Below, piece after piece: positions 4,267 through 39,400 of a stretch of 64,000 nucleotides of DNA (the stretch's first letter is position 1; each line of letters starts with the position of its first letter). The position numbers were made by a program, and so were the translations under genes. The notes below the pieces were generated by a model. The model did no database searches and was not told the DNA's origin. It was given only the letters and a program-made list of their open reading frames with translations. Location of the stretch: IMG/VR virus record IMGVR_UViG_3300043399_000877, positions 1 through 64,000 of that record; one strand, 5' to 3'.

Positions 4267-4541
4267 GTTTTGAGTTTATGCCAGTATGTATAGTAATCGT
4301 TTTCCAGTTGCACAAAGAATCTCTTTATCTTATGGCAAATGGTATTTGGCCTCAGAGATTTTTGATTCCAGTCCCTAGTTACTGACTCAATTGCCTCGTC
4401 TTCGGTTTCTTCGACAAACGTTCCGCCCTGAGCTGCACAGTGCAAACACCGGGCATGTGCTTCAAAATCAAGCCCGCACACATATCGAACTATTTCAATT
4501 TCATCAGATCCGCAAAACGGACAAAAATCAAGGTTTTTCAA
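4248..4541 (-). CDS. Lar-like (restriction alleviation) Zn-ribbon protein
   Basis: LDFCPFCGS...ARCLHCAAQG...WNQ pattern. Confidence 0.65.
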   Translation of the reverse strand: MKNLDFCPFCGSDEIEIVRYVCGLDFEAHARCLHCAAQGGTFVEETEDEAIESVTRDWNQKSLRPNTICHKIKRFFVQLENDYYTYWHKLKTWDFFK

Positions 4542-10657: not shown

Positions 10658-10781
10658 TGGCGCCGGGCGGGGATTACTGCCTCCTGACTTCTCATCGAAG
10701 GGTCATGACCCTCTCAAAGCCATTTTCTCCATTCGCCTTTGGGTCATGACTCCCATCAGCCACACCTATGTGATACCCAGC
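10658..10781 (-). ncRNA. tRNA-like RNA with enlarged central domain
   Basis: GCTGGGT/GCCCGGC 7-bp acceptor + G + CCA, degenerate T-arm, central stem built from two GGGTCATGAC(C/T)C palindromes. Confidence 0.55.
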
Positions 10782-10862
10782 TAACTTAATTGGAAGAACA
10801 GTCTCGGAATCGGAGCAGTGCCAGCACCGCGTCCAGTGGGTCGGTAACACGAAAACTGTTCT

Positions 10863-11489
10863 TCAAGTTAAGTTTTTTAGTGCAGTTATTATCTGGTCTC
10901 TAGTCCAAATACACACATTTCGTTTTACAAACGACGGAAGAGTGTCATTTATAGAAAACACTGGATCAGGAAAATTAAATGGGTGTTTTTTAAAGTTAAG
11001 CTCTGCATAACCGCCAGTCGTTATGTTTACATTTTCTGCAGGAGTATCGTGGCAGGTAGTAAACAGAAGTGGCGTACCACTTCTTAAAAAATTATTTAAC
11101 GTTGCATATATGTCTTTGAAAGACATATGAAACATGCAATCTCTACAAAGCATCATATCTGCTTGCGGTAACGGGTCAACTGTTATATCCATAACTCTAA
11201 GATCCAGGTTTGGAAACTTAGCCCGGTTTTTTTCTATCAAAAAATCAACTACGTCGGCACCGATATACTTTATATCAAGGGTGTCAACTAATGTTCCCAT
11301 CCACGTAAGGTCACCACATCCAGCATCAAAAAGTGTTTTTACATTAAACTGCTCGATTATGCCGGGAAAGGCTGATCTTAATTGTTCTGTGTACCATAAA
11401 GAAGATCCGGGACCACTCAAAGGTGTATCACCCTGTCCGCCCCATTCTTCATTTTTGTATATTTTTGAAAATATTTCTTTATTGCTCAT
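10863..11489 (-). CDS. Class I SAM-dependent methyltransferase
   Basis: SGPGS, LFDAGCGD, YIGADVV, DMMLCRDC motifs. Confidence 0.85.
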   Translation of the reverse strand: MSNKEIFSKIYKNEEWGGQGDTPLSGPGSSLWYTEQLRSAFPGIIEQFNVKTLFDAGCGDLTWMGTLVDTLDIKYIGADVVDFLIEKNRAKFPNLDLRVMDITVDPLPQADMMLCRDCMFHMSFKDIYATLNNFLRSGTPLLFTTCHDTPAENVNITTGGYAELNFKKHPFNFPDPVFSINDTLPSFVKRNVCIWTRDQIITALKNLT

Positions 11490-11508: not shown

Positions 11509-12520
11509 GCATAGCTTGAGATTACAGCATGCTTCGAGTGCCTTTCTGGAGTACCACCGGCCTTGCGAGCCGTGTTGCCAGTTTATCCACTAAAGCCAGT
11601 TACGGTCATTCAGTATCACTCATGGTCGCCTTGTTGAGGAGTGGCATTTCTCCTGTCGCACGTTGCTATTCGTCCATCAATCCTTCGCCTGCCTTGCGAG
11701 CAGTTCACTTCCGCTAAGAAGTTACGCTATCTTTCCGAACAACTACATCAGCCTTGCGAGCATCCGTAGACCACATTCTCTTTCGAGTGTGGTATTAGAC
11801 CACTTTCACAACGTACCGGGACAGTCTTTCGCTTTTGAGTCAATAGTAGGACTTGAACCTACAGTCGACGGTTCCATAAAACCGTTGCATTACCATTATG
11901 CAATATTGCGAACCTACTTCGATGTGCTGTCCCAGTTGCACCATGTCTTGTTAGACACAGTATACAACACACCGACTGTCTTTCAGCTTGCGGCTTACTC
12001 AACCTTACTTCACGAGTCCGGGGCCTAACCCTTCTTCGCTTGTAATGCTACCTAGCCTTTGCTTGCGGGCTCAGACAGTGTAGCTACCTGTTGATATTCA
12101 GCACTCGTTAGTTTGGCTGAAAGCTGTTCGGGCGCCAACCCTCTTACCACTCACCGACTGGCTCTGTGGCTATCCTTTCGGACAACTCTCCTAACTTAAT
12201 GCCTACCGCCATTCTACTGACGGGACTTGCTTTCGCGTCATTGCGAGTCAAGTCTAATCCAGGCTTGTATGAACGAACCATTGCTGGTGCCAGTTTATAG
12301 GAAACCTGGCCTTGGGTGTGTTACCACACTTATTCTAGTGACGTCATACCGCCAATCTTTAACACAAAGCCCACGTTTCACAACGTTAACTTTGCGAGTC
12401 TCTGTTTTTAACTGTACCCCAAAACGTTGCCAATTGACTGGCTGGTTATACCTTGTTGGGTAGGATACGGATAAACTCCGTTTTTTGCCACATACAGTTA
12501 AAAACAGAGCGTTTACTCTG
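11509..12520 (-). ncRNA. Large structured ncRNA, GOLLD-like candidate
   Basis: ~1 kb with no credible minus-strand ORF, many GNRA-capped hairpins (GCTCGCAAGGC three times, CCGAAAGG, CTCGAAAG), perfect 17-bp stem 12400-12416/12493-12509, embedded tRNA-like domain, own promoter + boxA. Family identity not confirmed by a covariance search. Confidence 0.6.
11839..11910 (-). tRNA. Degenerate tRNA-His-like element embedded in the large ncRNA
   Basis: D-arm GCAT-AATGGTA-ATGC, ACGGT/ACCGT stem with 8-nt loop TTTATGGA, T-arm GTAGG-TTCAAGT-CCTAC; weak acceptor, no CCA. Confidence 0.6.
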
Positions 12521-12568: not shown

Positions 12569-12596
12569 AATATAGCAGCTAGTGCAGCAATGTCAA
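12569..12596 (-). promoter_or_regulatory. Sigma70-type promoter for the large ncRNA
   Basis: GTTGTTGACA-N16-TATATTAACAAC; nearly identical flanks at 12755-12782. Confidence 0.75.
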
Positions 12597-12754
12597 CAAC
12601 TATTTTGGTCTTGTTGCGGACTGTGTTTTTCTTTGCACAAAAATGTAAGGAACAGTCTTTGCAACGTCGTTTTAGTATACCGCGCAGTGTGTTTTTTCAT
12701 CCAAAGAAAGTATTTTAAGGAACACTGTTTGCGGCGTCGTTTTGTCGTGTTGTT

Positions 12755-12782
12755 AATATAGCAGCTCTTGCAAGTTTGTCAA
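12755..12782 (-). promoter_or_regulatory. Sigma70-type promoter driving hairpin units 3-4
   Basis: GTTGTTGACA-N16-TATATTAACAAC. Confidence 0.75.
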
Positions 12783-12791
12783 CAACTAAAT

Positions 12792-12875
12792 TGGTACACA
12801 CATCGTCTGCAGAATTGAACTGCGATCAGTCCCTATAGGACTAGCACGACCTTTGTGCTATGAACGATGTGCGTA
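12792..12875 (-). ncRNA. tRNA-like RNA with 12-bp acceptor-like stem and ACCA end
   Basis: TACGCACATCGT/ACGATGTGTGTA-CCA, T-arm GCAG-TTCAATT-CTGC, two internal hairpins AGCAC/GTGCT and GTCC/GGAC. Confidence 0.65.
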
Positions 12876-13020
12876 TAATTTAACTTGCGGCGTGTGTTTT
12901 GCTGATTTAAAGGTCAATTATTAAGGAACACGCTATGCAAGTATTGTGTAACCGGGCCGCGGATTGTGAGTTTTTTCCAAATAAAAATATAAGGAACAAT
13001 CTGTGCGGCCCGGTATTCTG

Positions 13021-14757
13021 TTAGTTCAGCAGCAGGTTTTCCAACCGGTCGTAGCTGAAGCTGCCGTAGCTGAGATCGTGATCGTATTCTACACCGTCTG
13101 CGCGATCCAAGTCGTAGCTGATGCCGGCGGCATCCAACAGTTGGCTCACAGTCCAGAAACGGCTGGTACCACGAGCAACAACAGCAGTTGACTTGTTGTC
13201 CACACTCCAACGGTTATCGTTGAGACGACCCTGGTAGACAGTGAAGGTGTTGTTGTTGACAAAACCGATCACATTACCGCGGCTATCCAGCGAACCCTTT
13301 TCGCGAATTACGACGTCCTCAATCCAACGATCCTTGCCGTCACGACCCACGACCAGTTCAAACCCAGCACCGTTGTTACCACTGAAGATGTTAACAAACA
13401 GGCCGTATTCGACACCGGTACTGGTCATGAATTCCATAGCACCGTTGCGAGCGCTGGTCATATCACCACTGAAGGTAACCGGATTGCTCTTGCTGTAACC
13501 ACTCCATGCACCCCAACCAGTACGATGACCGCTGCGGTCAATAGTGCTGAGATCGAGGTCATGTGCGCCCCAGTCGTCTTGCCAGTAAACACCGGCGCTG
13601 ATACGTCCACCACTCACGGTGATGTTGGTACCGTAGGGCAGGTTACCCAGTGCTTGCTTGCGGCTGATCGGAAGACCGTAATCAACAGTGCTATCCAGCA
13701 AAATACGCTTGCCCTGAAGACCAGCAAGATCGCGGCGGAGGCTAGCAACAATCATGTCACGGACACGATTCAGTCCAGCAGTATCACGAACCGCGCGGCC
13801 TGTTTCAAGATGCACTTTACCGTTGCGAACAATAAATGCGTCGGTATCCTGACCGGTGTGCTTGTACTCGATCAAGTTCAGGATCTTGAAGCGGTCACGA
13901 AGGCTAACCTTCTCAAGCGCCGTCTGGTCTGCACGACCAGCCAGTGCCAGTGCAAGGAACCGCTTGCCGATCGGTTCGTGAACCGGGACATGGTTGCGCT
14001 TGCTGAGTCGGGTGATACGGTTAATCACGTTACGATTGACAGCTCGCTTTGCAGCAAGGATCAACGGCTTGTGGCGGTTGAACACCTGTGCCAGCGGCAT
14101 TTCGTGTGCTTCTAGAAACTTGGTAGTAATCTGGCTGCAAACTTTGATGCTGTCAATAACCTGACGGCTCTTGATCAGCAGGGTTTTTCCGGTTGCAACC
14201 TTCACCATATAACGAACAGCGTCGTCACCGTTGTTGAAACGGTCGCGATTGGGATTGAACAGTTCAACCCGCAGTTCGTTATTACGAATCTGGTTTACAT
14301 CGTAGTCGATGTTGAAGTCCTGGATGATCTGACGAACAAGATCAGAATCTTTAACCGGAGCATTTGCATAAATCAGTGCGCGAACACGATCAGCAAGTTG
14401 CTCAACAGTGATACCCTGAACATAGGTCATAACCATAACCTGGCCTTCTTCAACTTCCAGGTCAAACAGGCCCGGACGATTGAGACCGTAAACTTCCACG
14501 TAGTGGAGCAGTTGCTTGGTCACCAGCTGAACAAGGCTGGCAGTATCACGCTCAACACGCCCGAAAAGGGTGCGAATAGCGAGCGGACTGCGGGTTGCCA
14601 TCAACACAGCCCTATGAACCGAGTTGGGTTCAAAGTCGGTGACAACAGCCAGTTTTTCAACCAACGAAGTGTTAACCACGCCGGTCGTCGCTCCGGGTTC
14701 TACAACCAGAGCATTGAACAGTTTAAGAACGTTTGCTTGTGCAGTCTGATTGTACAT
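13021..14757 (-). CDS. Conserved large-phage protein, helical N-terminal region with TerD-like C-terminal domain
   Basis: Start MYNQ at 14757 (RBS AAGGAG); C-terminal GVYW...HDLDLS...TGW...VTFSGDMTSARNGAMEF resembles TerD-family motifs; GC-richer codon usage typical of highly expressed genes. Confidence 0.6.
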   Translation of the reverse strand: MYNQTAQANVLKLFNALVVEPGATTGVVNTSLVEKLAVVTDFEPNSVHRAVLMATRSPLAIRTLFGRVERDTASLVQLVTKQLLHYVEVYGLNRPGLFDLEVEEGQVMVMTYVQGITVEQLADRVRALIYANAPVKDSDLVRQIIQDFNIDYDVNQIRNNELRVELFNPNRDRFNNGDDAVRYMVKVATGKTLLIKSRQVIDSIKVCSQITTKFLEAHEMPLAQVFNRHKPLILAAKRAVNRNVINRITRLSKRNHVPVHEPIGKRFLALALAGRADQTALEKVSLRDRFKILNLIEYKHTGQDTDAFIVRNGKVHLETGRAVRDTAGLNRVRDMIVASLRRDLAGLQGKRILLDSTVDYGLPISRKQALGNLPYGTNITVSGGRISAGVYWQDDWGAHDLDLSTIDRSGHRTGWGAWSGYSKSNPVTFSGDMTSARNGAMEFMTSTGVEYGLFVNIFSGNNGAGFELVVGRDGKDRWIEDVVIREKGSLDSRGNVIGFVNNNTFTVYQGRLNDNRWSVDNKSTAVVARGTSRFWTVSQLLDAAGISYDLDRADGVEYDHDLSYGSFSYDRLENLLLN

Positions 14758-14831
14758 CGTTGTCTCCTTTGTATGCACACTTTATAACAGTTGTCGCGTG
14801 TTGCGTCAAGTGTTATTTTGAAGTCTTTATT

Positions 14832-15227
14832 TTAGTCTTTATGGTGTTGCCAAAGTTTGTCTGAACCACCTAGGTGACCCCAGTCAGAGTCGACAACCAT
14901 TTTTGAACTAATACCGCCGCGCGGGCGGAAAGTAATTTCAAGACGAATACGAAATGGATCGTAGGCTTCCATCAAATGCTTATACATCACGTCTGTAGCC
15001 CTCTCGTATGAAATTACGGTATCTCGATATTGTATCAGATACTCTTTGAGAGATTTTAGTTCAATTGTTTTTTCTTTACCATGAAACCAAATCTTGATAT
15101 GTCCAAAGTCTGGTTGGTTTTTCACCCCAAGAAATGTAAATTCCGGAATATCAATCTGTTGTTCATATCCAGCGGCAGCATTTGGTAAAGATTTTAGTGT
15201 ATTTTCAATTGTATTCCAAAGTTTCAT
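14832..15227 (-). CDS. queF: QueF-like T-fold protein (catalytic Cys replaced)
   Basis: PEFTFLGVKNQPDFG, ELKSLKEY QueF motif, ISYE, FRPRGGISS. Confidence 0.75.
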   Translation of the reverse strand: MKLWNTIENTLKSLPNAAAGYEQQIDIPEFTFLGVKNQPDFGHIKIWFHGKEKTIELKSLKEYLIQYRDTVISYERATDVMYKHLMEAYDPFRIRLEITFRPRGGISSKMVVDSDWGHLGGSDKLWQHHKD

Positions 15228-15802: not shown

Positions 15803-15846
15803 TTTGCTAATCTAGCAGTGCCGTCAGCAAATGTCAACAAGTTTTA

Positions 15847-17331: not shown

Positions 17332-17687
17332 GTCTCTACAAGGTATAGCAATCTACGACATTTCTTTCTCCTTTTGTCATATATGGTGACAGCCTAACAG
17401 TCGATCTTAATGGGTATTAGCACTGGCAGGTTCCCATTTCCTGCATCTCTTCGCTTTCGCTACTTTACCGTTTCTGGTGTGTGAGGCGGGTGTTCTCACC
17501 TCAGTGCCGCAGGGTTTCTGGTTTGCTGTCTCTACTACAAACCCTTTTTCGAATTGGCGACCACTGTTAGCCGCTGTTGCGACCCCCAACACGTTGTCCT
17601 GCCCCATCGGGGGCCTTGGCGTGTTTTTGTATTGGGATTTAGCATCCAAGTATCCAATCGCGACAGTGGGGGCGCATGGATACTGAT

Positions 17688-17762
17688 TGGCGCGTGTGGA
17701 GGGACTCGAACCCACAACTGTACGCTTTAGAGGCGTCTGCTCTACCATTGAGCTACACATGC
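17688..17762 (-). tRNA. Amber suppressor-type tRNA (anticodon CTA)
   Basis: GCATGTGTAGCTCAATGGTAGAGC-AGACGC-CT-CTA-AA-GCGT...GTGGGTTCGAGTCCCTC-CACACGC-G-CCA. Confidence 0.85.
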
Positions 17763-18095
17763 ATTATCTTGTAAGGCAAGTTCTTAAACCCGTGATACAG
17801 GTTCGGCTTGCCCGCCCGTGGTTTTCACACCACGGACTTGACCACTGAGTTATCAGCCCCATTTTTATACACCCTGGGTCTAAAGCAGGGTGTTTTACAA
17901 CACCGGTCCTATGCCGGTGAGCCGCAGCCGGACCGGCGGACTATTACCCCCTGCCCTCCCGAAACTATATTCCGGTACATTGAGCGGCGTTGTAAAAGTG
18001 GAGTTGGCAAGGGTTCCGACCCCTACTTTAGTTGCAACCTACGCCTGCCCGGCGATCCTAGCTGCAACTGACAATCCGTGTCAATCCAACATAAT

Positions 18096-18871: not shown

Positions 18872-18889
18872 TTAAAATTCCATAGTAAG

Positions 18890-18961
18890 AAGGATATTTG
18901 GATTCGAACCAAAATCACATGAATCTAAATCATGCCACTCTATCCACTTGAGTTATATCCT
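18890..18961 (-). tRNA. Atypical short-arm tRNA with TAG anticodon (possible pseudo-tRNA)
   Basis: AGGATAT/ATATCCT acceptor, D-loop AGTGGATA, CATGA-TT-TAG-AT-TCATG, short variable loop, no CCA. Confidence 0.6.
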
Positions 18962-18991
18962 GTCACTATGTATTTACGCAGATTATATAAA

Positions 18992-19598: not shown

Positions 19599-19674
19599 TG
19601 GAGGCGCGTCGGGGAGTTTAACCACCGTCCTTGGCCCTTGCACAGGCCACGCATTAACCCTTTGCTAACGCGCC
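19599..19674 (-). tRNA. Atypical tRNA-Cys(GCA)-like
   Basis: GGCGCGT/ACGCGCC-T-CCA as in bacterial tRNA-Cys, but 8-nt anticodon loop TGTGCAAG and bulged T-arm with TTAAACT loop. Confidence 0.7.
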
Positions 19675-19780
19675 ACTGTTTAGAAGATAACAGCAGGGTA
19701 CGCAAACTCCCTGAAGGGCCCACTTCAAAGCGAACTCAATCACCCAAGCCCCGGCTGTGTACTGTTATCTTCTAAATAGT

Positions 19781-19863
19781 TGGTACCCGCGGCCGGACTC
19801 GAACCGGCACACCTGTGGCGGGAGATTTTAAGTCTCCTGTGTCTACCGTTCCACCACGCGGGC
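19781..19863 (-). tRNA. tRNA-Leu(TAA)
   Basis: GGAGA-CT-TAA-AA-TCTCC, long variable arm, ACCA. Confidence 0.95.
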
Positions 19864-38637: not shown

Positions 38638-38814
38638 AACTAACCTCTTTACGAATATTTAGTTAATTATGAAATAGTTCACTTACAGTTTCAGAGTGGT
38701 GCGTTTTGTATGTCCACTATTCGAATCCTGTCGGTGCAGAACCGATTATATCTGCACAAGACTACATTCCCAGCCTCTCAGACTATGTCATCGATTTTTG
38801 CCGTCTGTAAGTAA

Positions 38815-39148
38815 GTGCAACGGTTCTGTTGCTAGGTCCGTTGCCAACCCCCGGTCGCTTATTAGGCGGCCATTGCCATTTCTGGCGCTGCGTTAATATT
38901 TGCAGTTATCATTTTCTTCGCGGTAACGGCGCTTAGATCCCGGTGACTCCATCCTGCCTAGTTCGTACATCGATCCTGTTTCGGCCCCATCAAAGATACA
39001 TGCACATACGTCCTACTCCTGCTTCCAGCGTGTCGCTATCAACATAGGTTTTCGGAAAATCGCTGTACCTAGTATGACATGTATCTATGGTGGAGCCGTC
39101 GGGTACCGCCCCCGAGTCTGTCCCGTGTTCGGTGAACTTCAACGTCAC
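38815..39148 (-). ncRNA. ssrA: Circularly permuted two-piece tmRNA (alphaproteobacterial type)
   Basis: Acceptor piece ...GACTCGGGGGCGGTACCCGACGGCTCCACCA (CCA end at 39088) precedes coding piece GGGGCCGAAACAGGATCGA (starts 38988); 7-bp acceptor with G3-U70; tag ORF 38903-38862 ANINAAPEMAMAA*. Confidence 0.92.
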
Positions 39149-39154
39149 ATGTTA

Positions 39155-39183
39155 TTTATACACTTATTCTATACTAGCGTCAA
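39155..39183 (-). promoter_or_regulatory. tmRNA promoter: sigma70 TTGACG-N17-TATAAA overlapping a TATAAATA late promoter
   Basis: CTTGACGCTAGTATAGAATAAGTGTATAAATAAC. Confidence 0.7.
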
Positions 39184-39400
39184 GATATTTCTTGTATTCT
39201 TCCAATTTGTCTTTTTCCAAAACCTCGTCAAGGACAATATTAGGGTATTTAAGGTAAGCAAAAGTCTTTTCTCGATCAGTCAGCCAAACCACTTTACCAC
39301 CTGCTACTACAAACTTAGAGAGTAGTTTCCAGTATATATAGCATCGTTTTCGCTTATCATTGCTTGGGGGTTTTGGTATCTGTGCTTGCCAGGGTTTCAT
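39164..39400 (-). CDS. Hypothetical protein
   Basis: 78-aa ORF in operon. Confidence 0.6.
   Translation of the reverse strand: MKPWQAQIPKPPSNDKRKRCYIYWKLLSKFVVAGGKVVWLTDREKTFAYLKYPNIVLDEVLEKDKLEEYKKYLDASIE

What the first reader, a model, noticed from the sequence alone, without database searches (positions are those of the whole stretch)
12792..12875. CCA-ending tRNA mimic with a 12-bp acceptor-like stem inside the hairpin array
Seen: TACGCACATCGT/ACGATGTGTGTA followed by CCA, a 4-bp T-stem with a TTCAATT loop, and two short hairpins replacing the D and anticodon arms. The geometry fits neither 7/5 tRNAs nor 8/4 or 9/3 allo-tRNAs. It lies between hairpin units 2 and 3. Inference: an RNase P/RNase Z-type processing signal that liberates the array RNAs, or an acceptor-end decoy complementing the anticodon decoys.
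Basis: partly seen in the sequence, partly recalled or inferred. Interest (0 to 1): 0.62.

Follow-up and report, generated by a model that had tools for sequence, protein, structure and literature searches.

The report
Lineage-specific tRNA-like insert in jumbo phage
The cloverleaf is really there and is clearly derived from a tRNA, but it is an 85-base insertion found only in near-identical copies of this phage, its "CCA" belongs to the neighbouring promoter, and nothing shows it is a conserved processing signal or a chargeable tRNA.

Summary
On the minus strand, 12875..12792 folds into a continuous 13-bp closing helix (two G.U), a D-like arm with a GG loop, a short anticodon-like hairpin and a 4-bp T stem with a UUCAAUU loop, followed by CCA (MFE -34.5 kcal/mol, z -6.1).

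- The Rfam tRNA model is silent even at E<=10. The ARAGORN call, tRNA-Tyr(ata), is marginal and is lost in a 97%-identical variant.
- The element is an exact 85-nt indel (12879..12795). It is present only in a clade at least 97% identical (four samples with DNA).
- It is absent at a clean junction in relatives at 68-72% protein identity, although these keep the hairpin units and the promoter.
- The CCA is the start of the promoter-upstream module ACCAAWWTAGTTGTTGACA. That module occurs without the element in two relatives and at the window's own second promoter.
- No second copy was found in the window, 175 fetched loci, IMG/VR, GTDB genomes or INPHARED.

A model built from the element next finds ordinary tRNAs, and real tRNAs occupy the same slot in distant relatives. 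My reading is a recently acquired, tRNA-derived, non-decoding module. At most it acts as optional transcript punctuation. Interest is low to moderate.

The parts
12795..12879 (-). 85-nt segment present in the window clade and missing at a clean junction in relatives (the indel: AUUA plus the cloverleaf up to the last base of its 3' stem strand)
   Evidence: Window: GCAAGTTAA[85 nt]CCAATTTAGTTGTTGACA. L118: GCAAGTTAACCAATTTAGTTGTTGACA. L133 and L124 are equivalent.
12863..12875 (-). 5' strand of the 13-bp closing (acceptor-like) helix, UACGCACAUCGUU
   Evidence: In the 97% variant (L160/L161), A8>G and C10>U both give G.U pairs on this strand's RNA.
12843..12859 (-). D-like arm: 5-bp stem with AAAGGUC loop (GG as in G18G19)
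   Evidence: Resembles the D arm UAGCACAGUGGUAGUGC of tRNA-Thr(ggt) in L120.
12828..12842 (-). Short anticodon-like hairpin. MFE gives 6 bp plus a 3-nt loop. ARAGORN's alternative is a 5-bp stem (one U.G) plus the 7-nt loop CUAUAGG, at the cost of a 3-bp D stem.
12809..12823 (-). T arm: 4-bp stem GCAG/CUGC with loop UUCAAUU. The fifth pair would be C.A.
   Evidence: Near-identical to the T arm of L120 tRNA-Thr(ggt), GCAAGUUCAAUUCUCGC.
12795..12807 (-). 3' strand of the closing helix, GACGAUGUGUGUA
12792..12794 (-). CCA. This is the first bases of the promoter-upstream module, not part of the inserted segment.
   Evidence: Present at the same distance from the -35 in L118 and L133, which lack the element, and at promoter 2 of the window (12609..). 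At 15841 the equivalent CCA is the true 3' end of tRNA-Thr(agt).
12755..12782 (-). Sigma70-type promoter P1 (TTGACA-16-TATATT with TG), directly downstream of the element
   Evidence: Repeated module GTTGTTGACA...TATATTAACAAC.
12883..12942 (-). Hairpin unit 3, directly upstream of the element
   Evidence: Its sequence is nearly invariant in L118, L124 and L122.
12951..13014 (-). Hairpin unit 4, directly after the stop codon of the 585-aa ORF

Best explanation
The element is a recently acquired, tRNA-derived, non-decoding cloverleaf module. It is 85 nt long and was inserted between hairpin unit 3 and a sigma70-type promoter in one narrow lineage of a roughly 382-kb GOLLD-bearing jumbo phage.

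It keeps the parts of a tRNA that make the elbow: a GG D loop and a UUCAAUU T loop on a 4-bp stem. Its anticodon arm is short or ambiguous. Its acceptor helix runs on without interruption for 13 pairs.

The CCA that follows it is the start of the pre-existing promoter-upstream module, so the 'CCA end' comes from where the module sits.

If it does anything (inferred, not shown), it acts in cis on read-through transcripts of the upstream 585-aa gene and units 4 and 3. It would be a tRNA-shaped punctuation or 3'-end roadblock, taking the slot that real tRNA genes occupy after the hairpin units in distant relatives. It would be recognised by host RNase P through the helix-plus-ACCA end, or it would simply stall 3' exonucleases. 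It is dispensable for the hairpin array and for the phage family.
For: Structure:
- The fold is real and strong.

tRNA ancestry:
- ARAGORN calls a 70-nt cloverleaf.
- A covariance model built from the element (R1) finds, after itself, only ordinary tRNAs: L136 tRNA(tat) at 26.3 bits and E 5e-5, L120 tRNA-Thr(ggt) at 20.4 bits, and others at 15-19 bits. The shared similarity is in the D and T arms.

Indel:
- There are clean junctions in L118, L124 and L133.
- The element is present at 100% identity in L159/L163 and at 97% in L160/L161.
- Contigs without accessible DNA from three further samples (ERZ27275580, ERZ27275609, SRR35181290) show the same 1531-nt gene spacing.
- The protein tree places window+P0001 (+P0002) as a starred clade inside a 15-member group whose other sampled members lack the element, as do the outgroups. 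One gain is the most parsimonious history.

CCA belongs to the promoter module.

RNA-level reading on the minus strand:
- Three G.U pairs, and a better fold than the plus strand.
- The only two substitutions inside the element in the 97% variant both convert Watson-Crick pairs to G.U. The MFE fold is unchanged at -32.0 kcal/mol.

The slot is used by tRNAs elsewhere: tRNA-Gln at +159 (L137), +137 (L143) and +290 (L138), and tRNA-Val at +175 (L156), all after the same gene and hairpin units.
Against: - Two G.U-preserving transitions are expected about one time in four by chance. The substitution density in the element (2 in 85) is not clearly lower than in its flanks (7 in 136). Selection on the structure is therefore not shown.
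- Gain versus loss rests on an ORF tree with an unresolved polytomy. The locus is also mosaic: L122 has an ORF at 85% aa identity but units 4 and 3 at 97.5% nt identity.
- Promoter modules that carry ACCA may themselves be vestiges of tRNA 3' ends, as at 15841. In that case the CCA could have travelled with a tRNA-promoter cassette.
- A continuous extension of the acceptor helix is reported to hinder RNase P. Leader/3'-RCCA pairing inhibits the catalytic complex of bacterial RNase P (abstract of PMC9433436). A continuous coaxial extension without a bulge impairs mascRNA processing (PMC8457004).
- No donor sequence or second copy was found, so the origin is unexplained.
Confidence: 0.55

Rival explanations
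1. One reading: a dedicated RNase P / RNase Z-type processing signal that releases the hairpin-array RNAs.
For: - It has a tRNA-like elbow and a helix ending in ACCA.
- It sits where real tRNAs sit in distant relatives.
- All bona fide tRNAs of this phage encode CCA.
Against: - The array and its promoters are conserved without it in L118, L124, L133 and L120.
- Units 2 and 1 have their own promoter downstream of the element.
- The CCA is part of the promoter module.
- A continuous 13-bp helix is a poor context for RNase P.
Confidence: 0.15
2. A miniature inverted-repeat mobile element (MITE-like). The 12-13-nt terminal inverted repeats are transposase recognition ends, and the cloverleaf is incidental or a passenger.
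For: - It is a discrete 85-nt indel bounded exactly by inverted repeats.
- If the ends are taken as CGCAC.../...GTGTG, TA flanks both sides.
- Relatives carry homing-endonuclease-type genes in this region (GIY-YIG, NUMOD3, T5orf172).
Against: - It is single-copy. There is no second copy in the 64-kb window.
- Three exact 21-22-mer probes against IMG/VR, which holds the whole 382-kb contig, hit one site only. A probe built on the inverted repeats gave only chance hits.
- Two probes against GTDB genomes gave nothing.
- G.U pairs and G.U-preserving changes point to RNA-level rather than DNA-level pairing.
- The TA flanks can equally be the outer pairs of the helix.
Confidence: 0.1
3. An acceptor-end or whole-tRNA decoy: a non-decoding tRNA mimic that titrates a host tRNA-targeting defence nuclease, a CCA-adding or repair enzyme, or EF-Tu.
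For: - It has an intact tRNA elbow and a non-canonical anticodon arm.
- The genome is rich in tRNAs, a suppressor tRNA, tmRNA and other RNAs.
Against: - It is not conserved beyond one 97% clade.
- There is no associated gene.
- The CCA is borrowed.
- Nothing in the data bears on binding.
Confidence: 0.07
4. A working decoding tRNA (ARAGORN: tRNA-Tyr, anticodon AUA) whose precursor has paired leader and trailer.
For: ARAGORN finds a 7/3/5/4 cloverleaf with a 7-nt loop CUAUAGG, with U33 and a purine at 37.
Against: - The Rfam tRNA model reports nothing even at E<=10 on 131 nt, whereas every real tRNA here scores 40-71 bits.
- The ARAGORN call disappears in the 97% variant.
- In the 7-bp reading there is no CCA after the discriminator, although all 21 bona fide tRNAs here encode one.
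- From general knowledge, not tested here: bacterial tRNA-Tyr has a long variable arm and a GUA anticodon, and A34 is not used for Tyr.
Confidence: 0.03
5. A neutral relic: a decaying tRNA gene, or a fragment of another gene, that folds by accident.
For: It is lineage-specific and its substitution rate is like that of its flanks.
Against: - All four helices are intact, and the 6 extra pairs beyond a 7-bp acceptor are not what decay produces. z is -6.1.
- The only coding look-alike is an HNH endonuclease ORF in L171 (YAHR...RRCVNP). It was recovered because the probe selected for both repeat arms, and its interior is unrelated.
Confidence: 0.1

Closest known systems
Phage-encoded tRNA genes and pseudo-tRNAs in the tRNA islands of large phages
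   Same: - It lies in a tRNA-dense region: 24 ARAGORN calls in the window, all on this strand.
- It has cloverleaf order, a GG D loop and a UUCRANN T loop.
- It occupies a slot where relatives carry tRNA-Gln or tRNA-Val.
- Its D and T arms resemble tRNA-Thr(ggt) of a related phage.
   Different: - It fails the Rfam tRNA model.
- It has a 13-bp continuous closing helix, a 4-bp T stem and a short or ambiguous anticodon arm.
- It has no CCA of its own.
- It is not conserved among relatives that do conserve the real tRNAs.
mascRNA / MALAT1 3'-end module (tRNA-like with a leader-trailer extended acceptor stem; PMC8457004)
   Same: A non-decoding tRNA-like cloverleaf placed after a structured RNA 3' region, with its acceptor helix extended by flanking sequence. 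The proposed use is RNase P-dependent transcript punctuation.
   Different: - mascRNA is eukaryotic and conserved, and needs a bulged nucleotide at -1 for efficient cleavage.
- Here the helix is continuous, the element is not conserved, and no processing data exist.
tRNA-like module embedded in GOLLD RNA (Rfam RF02032), 900 nt downstream in the same window
   Same: A tRNA-shaped domain inside a larger phage non-coding region, on the same strand, closed by surrounding sequence and lacking a free CCA end.
   Different: The GOLLD tRNA scores 46 bits with the tRNA model and is conserved in relatives (L118 7020-7086, L124). The element scores nothing and is lineage-specific.
Bacterial MITEs (miniature inverted-repeat elements)
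   Same: It is small (85 nt), bounded by 12-13-nt inverted repeats, present or absent as a discrete unit, and folds as RNA.
   Different: It is single-copy wherever searched. There is no clear target-site duplication and no partner transposase. The tRNA-like interior is not a MITE feature.
YrlA / bacterial Y RNAs (tRNA-like domain plus a long terminal stem)
   Same: A long helix formed by the two ends, plus D- and T-arm mimicry.
   Different: - From my own recollection of the literature, not checked here: in YrlA the terminal stem replaces the anticodon stem, giving a permuted order. Here the order is the normal tRNA order.
- There is no Ro60/Rsr (TROVE) gene nearby. The adjacent 585-aa protein has no Pfam hit and no such fold match.
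- There is no Rfam hit.

Membership tests
tRNA (Rfam RF00005) | Scores at or above the family's gathering threshold (29 bits) with the covariance model | tested here: not met
   No tRNA hit at 12792-12875 at gathering, at E<=10 on 1.7 kb, or at E<=10 on 131 nt. The window's real tRNAs score 40-71 bits.
tRNA (Rfam RF00005) | 7-bp acceptor stem, discriminator base, then CCA (encoded in all tRNAs of this phage) | tested here: not met
   13 continuous pairs. In ARAGORN's 7-bp reading, the discriminator U is followed by GUG, not CCA. The CCA follows the 13th pair and belongs to the promoter module.
tRNA (Rfam RF00005) | D loop with G18G19 and T loop UUCRANN, able to form the elbow | tested here: met
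   The D-like loop is AAAGGUC and the T loop is UUCAAUU. Tertiary pairing itself is not testable here.
tRNA (Rfam RF00005) | 5-bp anticodon stem with a 7-nt loop (U33, purine 37) and a usable anticodon | tested here: inconclusive
   MFE gives 6 bp plus a 3-nt loop. ARAGORN's alternative gives 5 bp (one U.G) plus CUAUAGG, but shrinks the D stem to 3 bp. The anticodon would be AUA.
tRNA (Rfam RF00005) | 5-bp T stem | tested here: not met
   4 bp (GCAG/CUGC). The fifth position is C.A.
allo-tRNA / tRNA-Sec-type (8/4, 9/4, 9/3) | Acceptor plus T helix totalling 12-13 bp in a non-7/5 split | tested here: not met
   13 + 4 = 17 stacked pairs.
MITE | Terminal inverted repeats | tested here: met
   TACGCACATCGTT / GACGATGTGTGTA, 13 positions with two G:T.
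MITE | Target-site duplication | tested here: inconclusive
   TA flanks are possible only if the outer two pairs are excluded from the repeat. No empty site from a sufficiently close relative was available: the nearest clearly empty sites come from relatives at 68-72% aa identity, and L122 carries a third allele.
MITE | Multiple dispersed copies | tested here: not met
   One copy in the window and in the fetched loci. Exact probes against IMG/VR, which includes the whole 382-kb contig, hit one site only. GTDB genomes: none.
tRNA-like RNase P punctuation (mascRNA-like) | Cleaved by RNase P at the 5' side of the cloverleaf | not testable with these tools
   No transcript data. The -1 bulge that mascRNA needs for efficient cleavage is absent here.
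Conserved cis-element of the hairpin array | Co-occurs with the array in homologous loci | tested here: not met
   The array is present without the element in L118, L120, L124, L133 and about 20 more distant loci.
YrlA / Y RNA | Neighbouring Ro60/Rsr gene and permuted tRNA-like topology | tested here: not met
   No TROVE domain in neighbouring ORFs. The 585-aa model has no such fold match. The arm order is the normal tRNA order. No Rfam hit.

The most novel reading that the evidence does not exclude
The element could be the first sampled member of a class of non-decoding, long-stemmed tRNA mimics that move between GOLLD-bearing jumbo phages. Such mimics would serve as RNase P-guided transcript punctuation or as decoys for host enzymes that attack or repair tRNA acceptor ends. 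The window holds other stem-closed modules that would be relatives in function: 18962..18889, 19783..19672 and 12512..12397.
Probability: 0.1. Interest if true: 0.6.

Novelty: new variant of a known kind. Interest (0 to 1): 0.3.

Why it matters
As it stands, this is a caution. A very convincing CCA-ending cloverleaf can arise when a tRNA-derived module lands next to a promoter whose upstream flank happens to start with CCA. Comparison with relatives shows the module is dispensable.

It would matter more if end mapping showed that the long helix plus the borrowed ACCA really directs RNase P. That would be a natural bacterial-virus counterpart of the MALAT1/mascRNA trick, caught just after acquisition, with natural 'empty' alleles available as controls.

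The more promising objects for follow-up are its neighbours:
- the covarying UGUUCCUUA hairpin family, conserved across the whole phage group;
- the several long-stem modules interleaved with tRNAs.

Tried and rejected
- **Hairpin-motif probe.** A gapped probe for the hairpin motif (TGTTCCTTA..AAACACA) in IMG/VR returned more than 100 single chance hits and no homologous arrays. It was useless for finding relatives.
- **Unit-3 probe.** The exact 21-mer at the end of unit 3 found nothing in metagenome contigs. That collection evidently lacks these samples. The second scan, with the protein alignment, gave 26 loci.
- **INPHARED blastn.** The only hit to the element was a 19-nt T-arm match in Stenotrophomonas phages RAS14 and CM1 (E = 3). 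It lies on the strand opposite to the tRNAs there and in no tRNA call, so I rejected it as chance.
- **Inverted-repeat probe in IMG/VR.** It gave 12 non-self hits, about the number expected by chance. The best (L171) shares 13 + 12 nt with the two arms but lies inside an HNH endonuclease ORF (YAHR...RRCVNP) with an unrelated interior. No such gene exists in the window or in related loci. I rejected 'decayed HNH fragment'.
- **Donor search.** GTDB genomes (two 22-mers) and IMG/VR (a 22-mer and a 21-mer): none.
- **Closest relative.** P0001 (98%) and several other contigs could not be read because the sample files were too large. Their gene spacing matches the window.
- **The neighbouring 585-aa protein.** I checked whether it might be an RNA-binding partner such as Ro60.
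  - No Pfam, PHROG, NCBIfam or PDB-sequence hit.
  - The AF2 model has pLDDT 80.
  - Foldseek against the PDB gave noise only.
  - VIA-align gave only a weak TerD-like match for residues 387-537 (Z 6.1-6.3, below the level the tool calls trustworthy).
  - There is no support for a link to the element.
- **Other Rfam families.** Nothing at the element except a 7.8-bit Glutamine-II noise hit.

Full report
**Where we are**

The window is part of IMGVR_UViG_3300043399_000877, a 381,886-bp phage contig. Everything around the finding is on the minus strand:
- 24 ARAGORN tRNA calls;
- a GOLLD RNA at 11975..11513 with an embedded tRNA-like domain;
- a skipping-rope RNA and a permuted tmRNA.

Read on the minus strand, the local order is:
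- a 585-aa ORF (14778..13021);
- hairpin unit 4 (13014..12951);
- unit 3 (12942..12883);
- the element (12875..12792);
- a sigma70-type promoter, TTGACA-16-TATATT with TG (12782..12755);
- unit 2 (12735..12679) and unit 1 (12665..12613);
- a second copy of the promoter (12596..12569);
- about 600 nt further on, the Rfam GOLLD match.

**The observation**

The sequence is as described.
- a 5-bp arm with loop AAAGGUC;
- a short hairpin (AGUCCU-AUA-GGGACU);
- a 4-bp stem with loop UUCAAUU.

CCA follows the last pair directly. The MFE structure is exactly this, at -34.5 kcal/mol and z -6.07, and none of 200 shuffles folded as well. The opposite strand folds less well (-29.7 kcal/mol), because the G.U pairs become C.A. 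Among the window's ARAGORN calls, only this one and 18962..18889 have 6 or more leader/trailer pairs beyond the acceptor stem.

**Is it a tRNA?**

ARAGORN calls 12869..12800 'tRNA-Tyr(ata)'. Its cloverleaf has:
- a 7-bp acceptor;
- a 3-bp D stem;
- a 5-bp anticodon stem with one U.G;
- a 7-nt loop CUAUAGG;
- a 4-bp T stem.

The call is marginal. It vanishes in the 97%-identical variant, which differs by two G.U-forming changes. The Rfam tRNA model reports nothing here at gathering, nor at E<=10 on 1.7 kb, nor at E<=10 on 131 nt. The real tRNAs of the window score 40-71 bits.

In the 7-bp reading no CCA follows the discriminator, although all bona fide tRNAs of this phage encode CCA.

The element is nevertheless tRNA-derived. 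A covariance model built from it (R1) finds only ordinary tRNAs after itself: L136 tRNA(tat) at 26.3 bits, L120 tRNA-Thr(ggt) at 20.4 bits, and others at 15-19 bits. The similarity is concentrated in the D arm (UAGCACAA.GGU.GUGC) and the T arm (UCGCAGUUCAAUUCUGC).

**Comparative evidence**

The 585-aa ORF belongs to a large, well-conserved family without annotation. I fetched homologous loci through exact-protein look-ups and pattern scans.

The element is present in:
- L159/L163 (JGI 3300047548), at 100% identity;
- L160 (JGI 3300051209) and L161 (SRR31904126), at 97.0% identity over 501 nt.

Contigs whose DNA could not be read, from three more samples, have the same 1531-nt spacing between the flanking genes.

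The element is absent, at a clean junction, in relatives whose ORF is 68-72% identical:
- L118 reads GCAAGTTAA|CCAATTTAGTTGTTGACA;
- L133 reads ..GTAAGTTAAACCAATAAAGTTGTTGACA;
- L124 reads GCAAGTTAATCAAAAAAGTTGTTGACA.

The window reads GCAAGTTAA[85 nt]CCAATTTAGTTGTTGACA.

L120 has the units and a promoter in a different layout, and no element. L122 has an ORF at 85% identity but units 4 and 3 at 97.5% nt identity. After GCAAGTTAA it shows a third sequence, and then its contig ends.

In the protein tree, window+P0001 and then P0002 form starred clades nested in a 15-member group. The other sampled members of that group lack the element, as do the outgroups. One gain on the window branch is the simplest history. 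The polytomy and the mosaicism of the locus leave room for a loss scenario.

**The CCA**

The three bases after the helix begin the module ACCAAWWTAGTTGTTGACA. That module is found:
- without any tRNA-like in L118 and L133;
- at the window's own promoter 2 (GACCAAAATAGTTGTTGACA).

The internal duplication between the two promoter regions starts exactly at 12795. So the 'CCA end' is a consequence of where the module sits.

At a third promoter (15841) the equivalent CCA is the genuine 3' end of tRNA-Thr(agt). tRNA-then-promoter is therefore a recurring arrangement, and the ACCA of these promoter modules may itself be an old tRNA vestige. That is inference.

**Is it mobile or repeated?**

No second copy was found anywhere searched:
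- the window;
- all 175 fetched loci, by blastn, nhmmer and the covariance model;
- IMG/VR, with a 22-mer and a 21-mer, which also cover the rest of the 382-kb contig;
- GTDB genomes;
- INPHARED.

A probe on the two repeat arms gave a chance-level number of hits. The best was an HNH endonuclease ORF with an unrelated interior.

**RNA-level selection?**

The 97% variant carries two changes inside the element. Both are in the 5' strand of the helix (A8>G, C10>U), and both turn Watson-Crick pairs into G.U on the minus-strand RNA. The fold is unchanged at -32.0 kcal/mol. This is suggestive, but it would happen about one time in four by chance. The substitution density is 2 in 85 inside the element against 7 in 136 in the flanks, which is not decisive.

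**Context that bears on function**

In more distant relatives (about 50-55% aa identity), real tRNA genes sit directly after the same hairpin units:
- tRNA-Gln in L137, L143 and L138;
- tRNA-Val in L156.

The slot after the 585-aa gene and its hairpins is thus a habitual place for a tRNA. Ordinary tRNA processing there would cut the upstream message just after its hairpins (inference).

The element may do the same job, or may simply be a passenger. Against efficient RNase P cleavage at the canonical +1 position:
- the acceptor helix continues without a bulge;
- the bacterial RNase P study reports that leader/3'-RCCA pairing extending the acceptor stem inhibits formation of the catalytic complex (abstract of PMC9433436);
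- the MALAT1/mascRNA study found that a continuous coaxial extension without the -1 bulge impairs processing (PMC8457004).

Cleavage at the base of the 13-bp helix, guided by the borrowed ACCA, remains conceivable but is untested.

**Verdict**

It is a real, stable, tRNA-derived cloverleaf with an unusual 13-bp closing helix. It is a young, single-copy, lineage-specific insertion. Its CCA is borrowed from the promoter next door, and the hairpin array does without it in every relative below about 97% identity.

It is neither a member of the tRNA family by the Rfam model nor a conserved part of the array. My best reading is a non-decoding tRNA-like module, at most optional transcript punctuation. 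Interest is low to moderate.

The surrounding hairpin family (about 40 covarying instances) and the other long-stem modules look more rewarding.

Noticed in passing
window minus strand: units at 13014..12951, 12942..12883, 12735..12679, 12665..12613; further UGUUCCUUA motifs at 1145, 18299, 27514; about 40 instances in L118-L157: A conserved hairpin family follows the 585-aa gene and the phage promoters throughout this phage group.
- P1 (3-11 bp, ending GC).
- A 5' internal loop AAA (A[ACU]A).
- P2, NNNUGU.
- A loop starting UCCUUA, A/U-rich, often ending AAAAC.
- P2', ACANNN.
- A single C, then P1'.
P1 and P2 covary heavily. No Rfam family matches. UCCUUA is the same as the 3' end of the 16S anti-Shine-Dalgarno tail (recalled from general knowledge, not checked here). 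It is a candidate new RNA motif.
   Followed up: partly
window 18962..18889 (-): ARAGORN 'tRNA-Leu(tag)' (Rfam tRNA 47.5 bits) has no CCA. Its leader and trailer form 8 further pairs beyond the acceptor stem. This is a second stem-extended tRNA-like in the same island.
   Followed up: partly
window 19783..19672, 12512..12397, 18000..17890, 10877..10780 (all -): Four more modules, each closed by a 16-20-bp helix around 50-80 nt of branched structure (z -3.1 to -5.5). One sits exactly between two tRNA genes. One sits just after promoter 2, at the 5' side of the GOLLD region. L124 has a different long inverted repeat at the corresponding place.
   Followed up: partly
window 17762..17688 (-): A tRNA with anticodon CUA (amber suppressor type; Rfam tRNA 60.6 bits). 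Stenotrophomonas jumbo phage RAS14 is annotated with a tRNA-Sup-CTA as well. This is a possible sign of stop-codon reassignment or suppression.
   Followed up: no
window 39200..38814 (-), 17509..17418 (-), 11975..11513 (-): A permuted (alpha-type) tmRNA, a skipping-rope RNA and a GOLLD RNA with an embedded tRNA-like domain. All are above Rfam gathering scores in one phage window.
   Followed up: no
window 14778..13021 (-): The 585-aa protein is very widespread: more than 300 relatives, with many invariant residues. It has no Pfam, PHROG, NCBIfam or PDB sequence match. The AF2 model has pLDDT 80. Only a weak TerD-like resemblance was found for residues 387-537 (Z 6.1-6.3). It is always followed by the hairpin units.
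   Followed up: partly
window 12786, 12600, 15841, 21669, 37976, 50285 (-): A repeated promoter module, [GC]TT[GC]TTGACA-N16/17-TAnnTT. Three copies are preceded by CCA plus five A/T bases, and at 15841 that CCA is the 3' end of tRNA-Thr(agt). In L160/L161 the bases after the CCA of promoter 1 match promoter 2, which may reflect gene conversion.
   Followed up: partly
L118 5826-5993 and L133 about 4348-4515: A 55-aa ORF is inserted between hairpin units 4 and 3 in two relatives and is absent from the window. L124 carries a 135-aa ORF between promoter-hairpin modules. The intergenic array is a hot spot for small-gene gain and loss.
   Followed up: no
L122 2314-2329: A third allele at the insertion site. 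After GCAAGTTAA the contig reads TCCATTCCTTTTTTGT and then ends. This matches neither the element nor the promoter flank, and was found nowhere else in the data held.
   Followed up: partly
window 15227..14832 (-) and 11489..10863 (-): A QueF-like protein (Pfam PF14489, 3.7e-19) and a methyltransferase (PHROG 3382, 1e-34) flank the RNA region.
   Followed up: no
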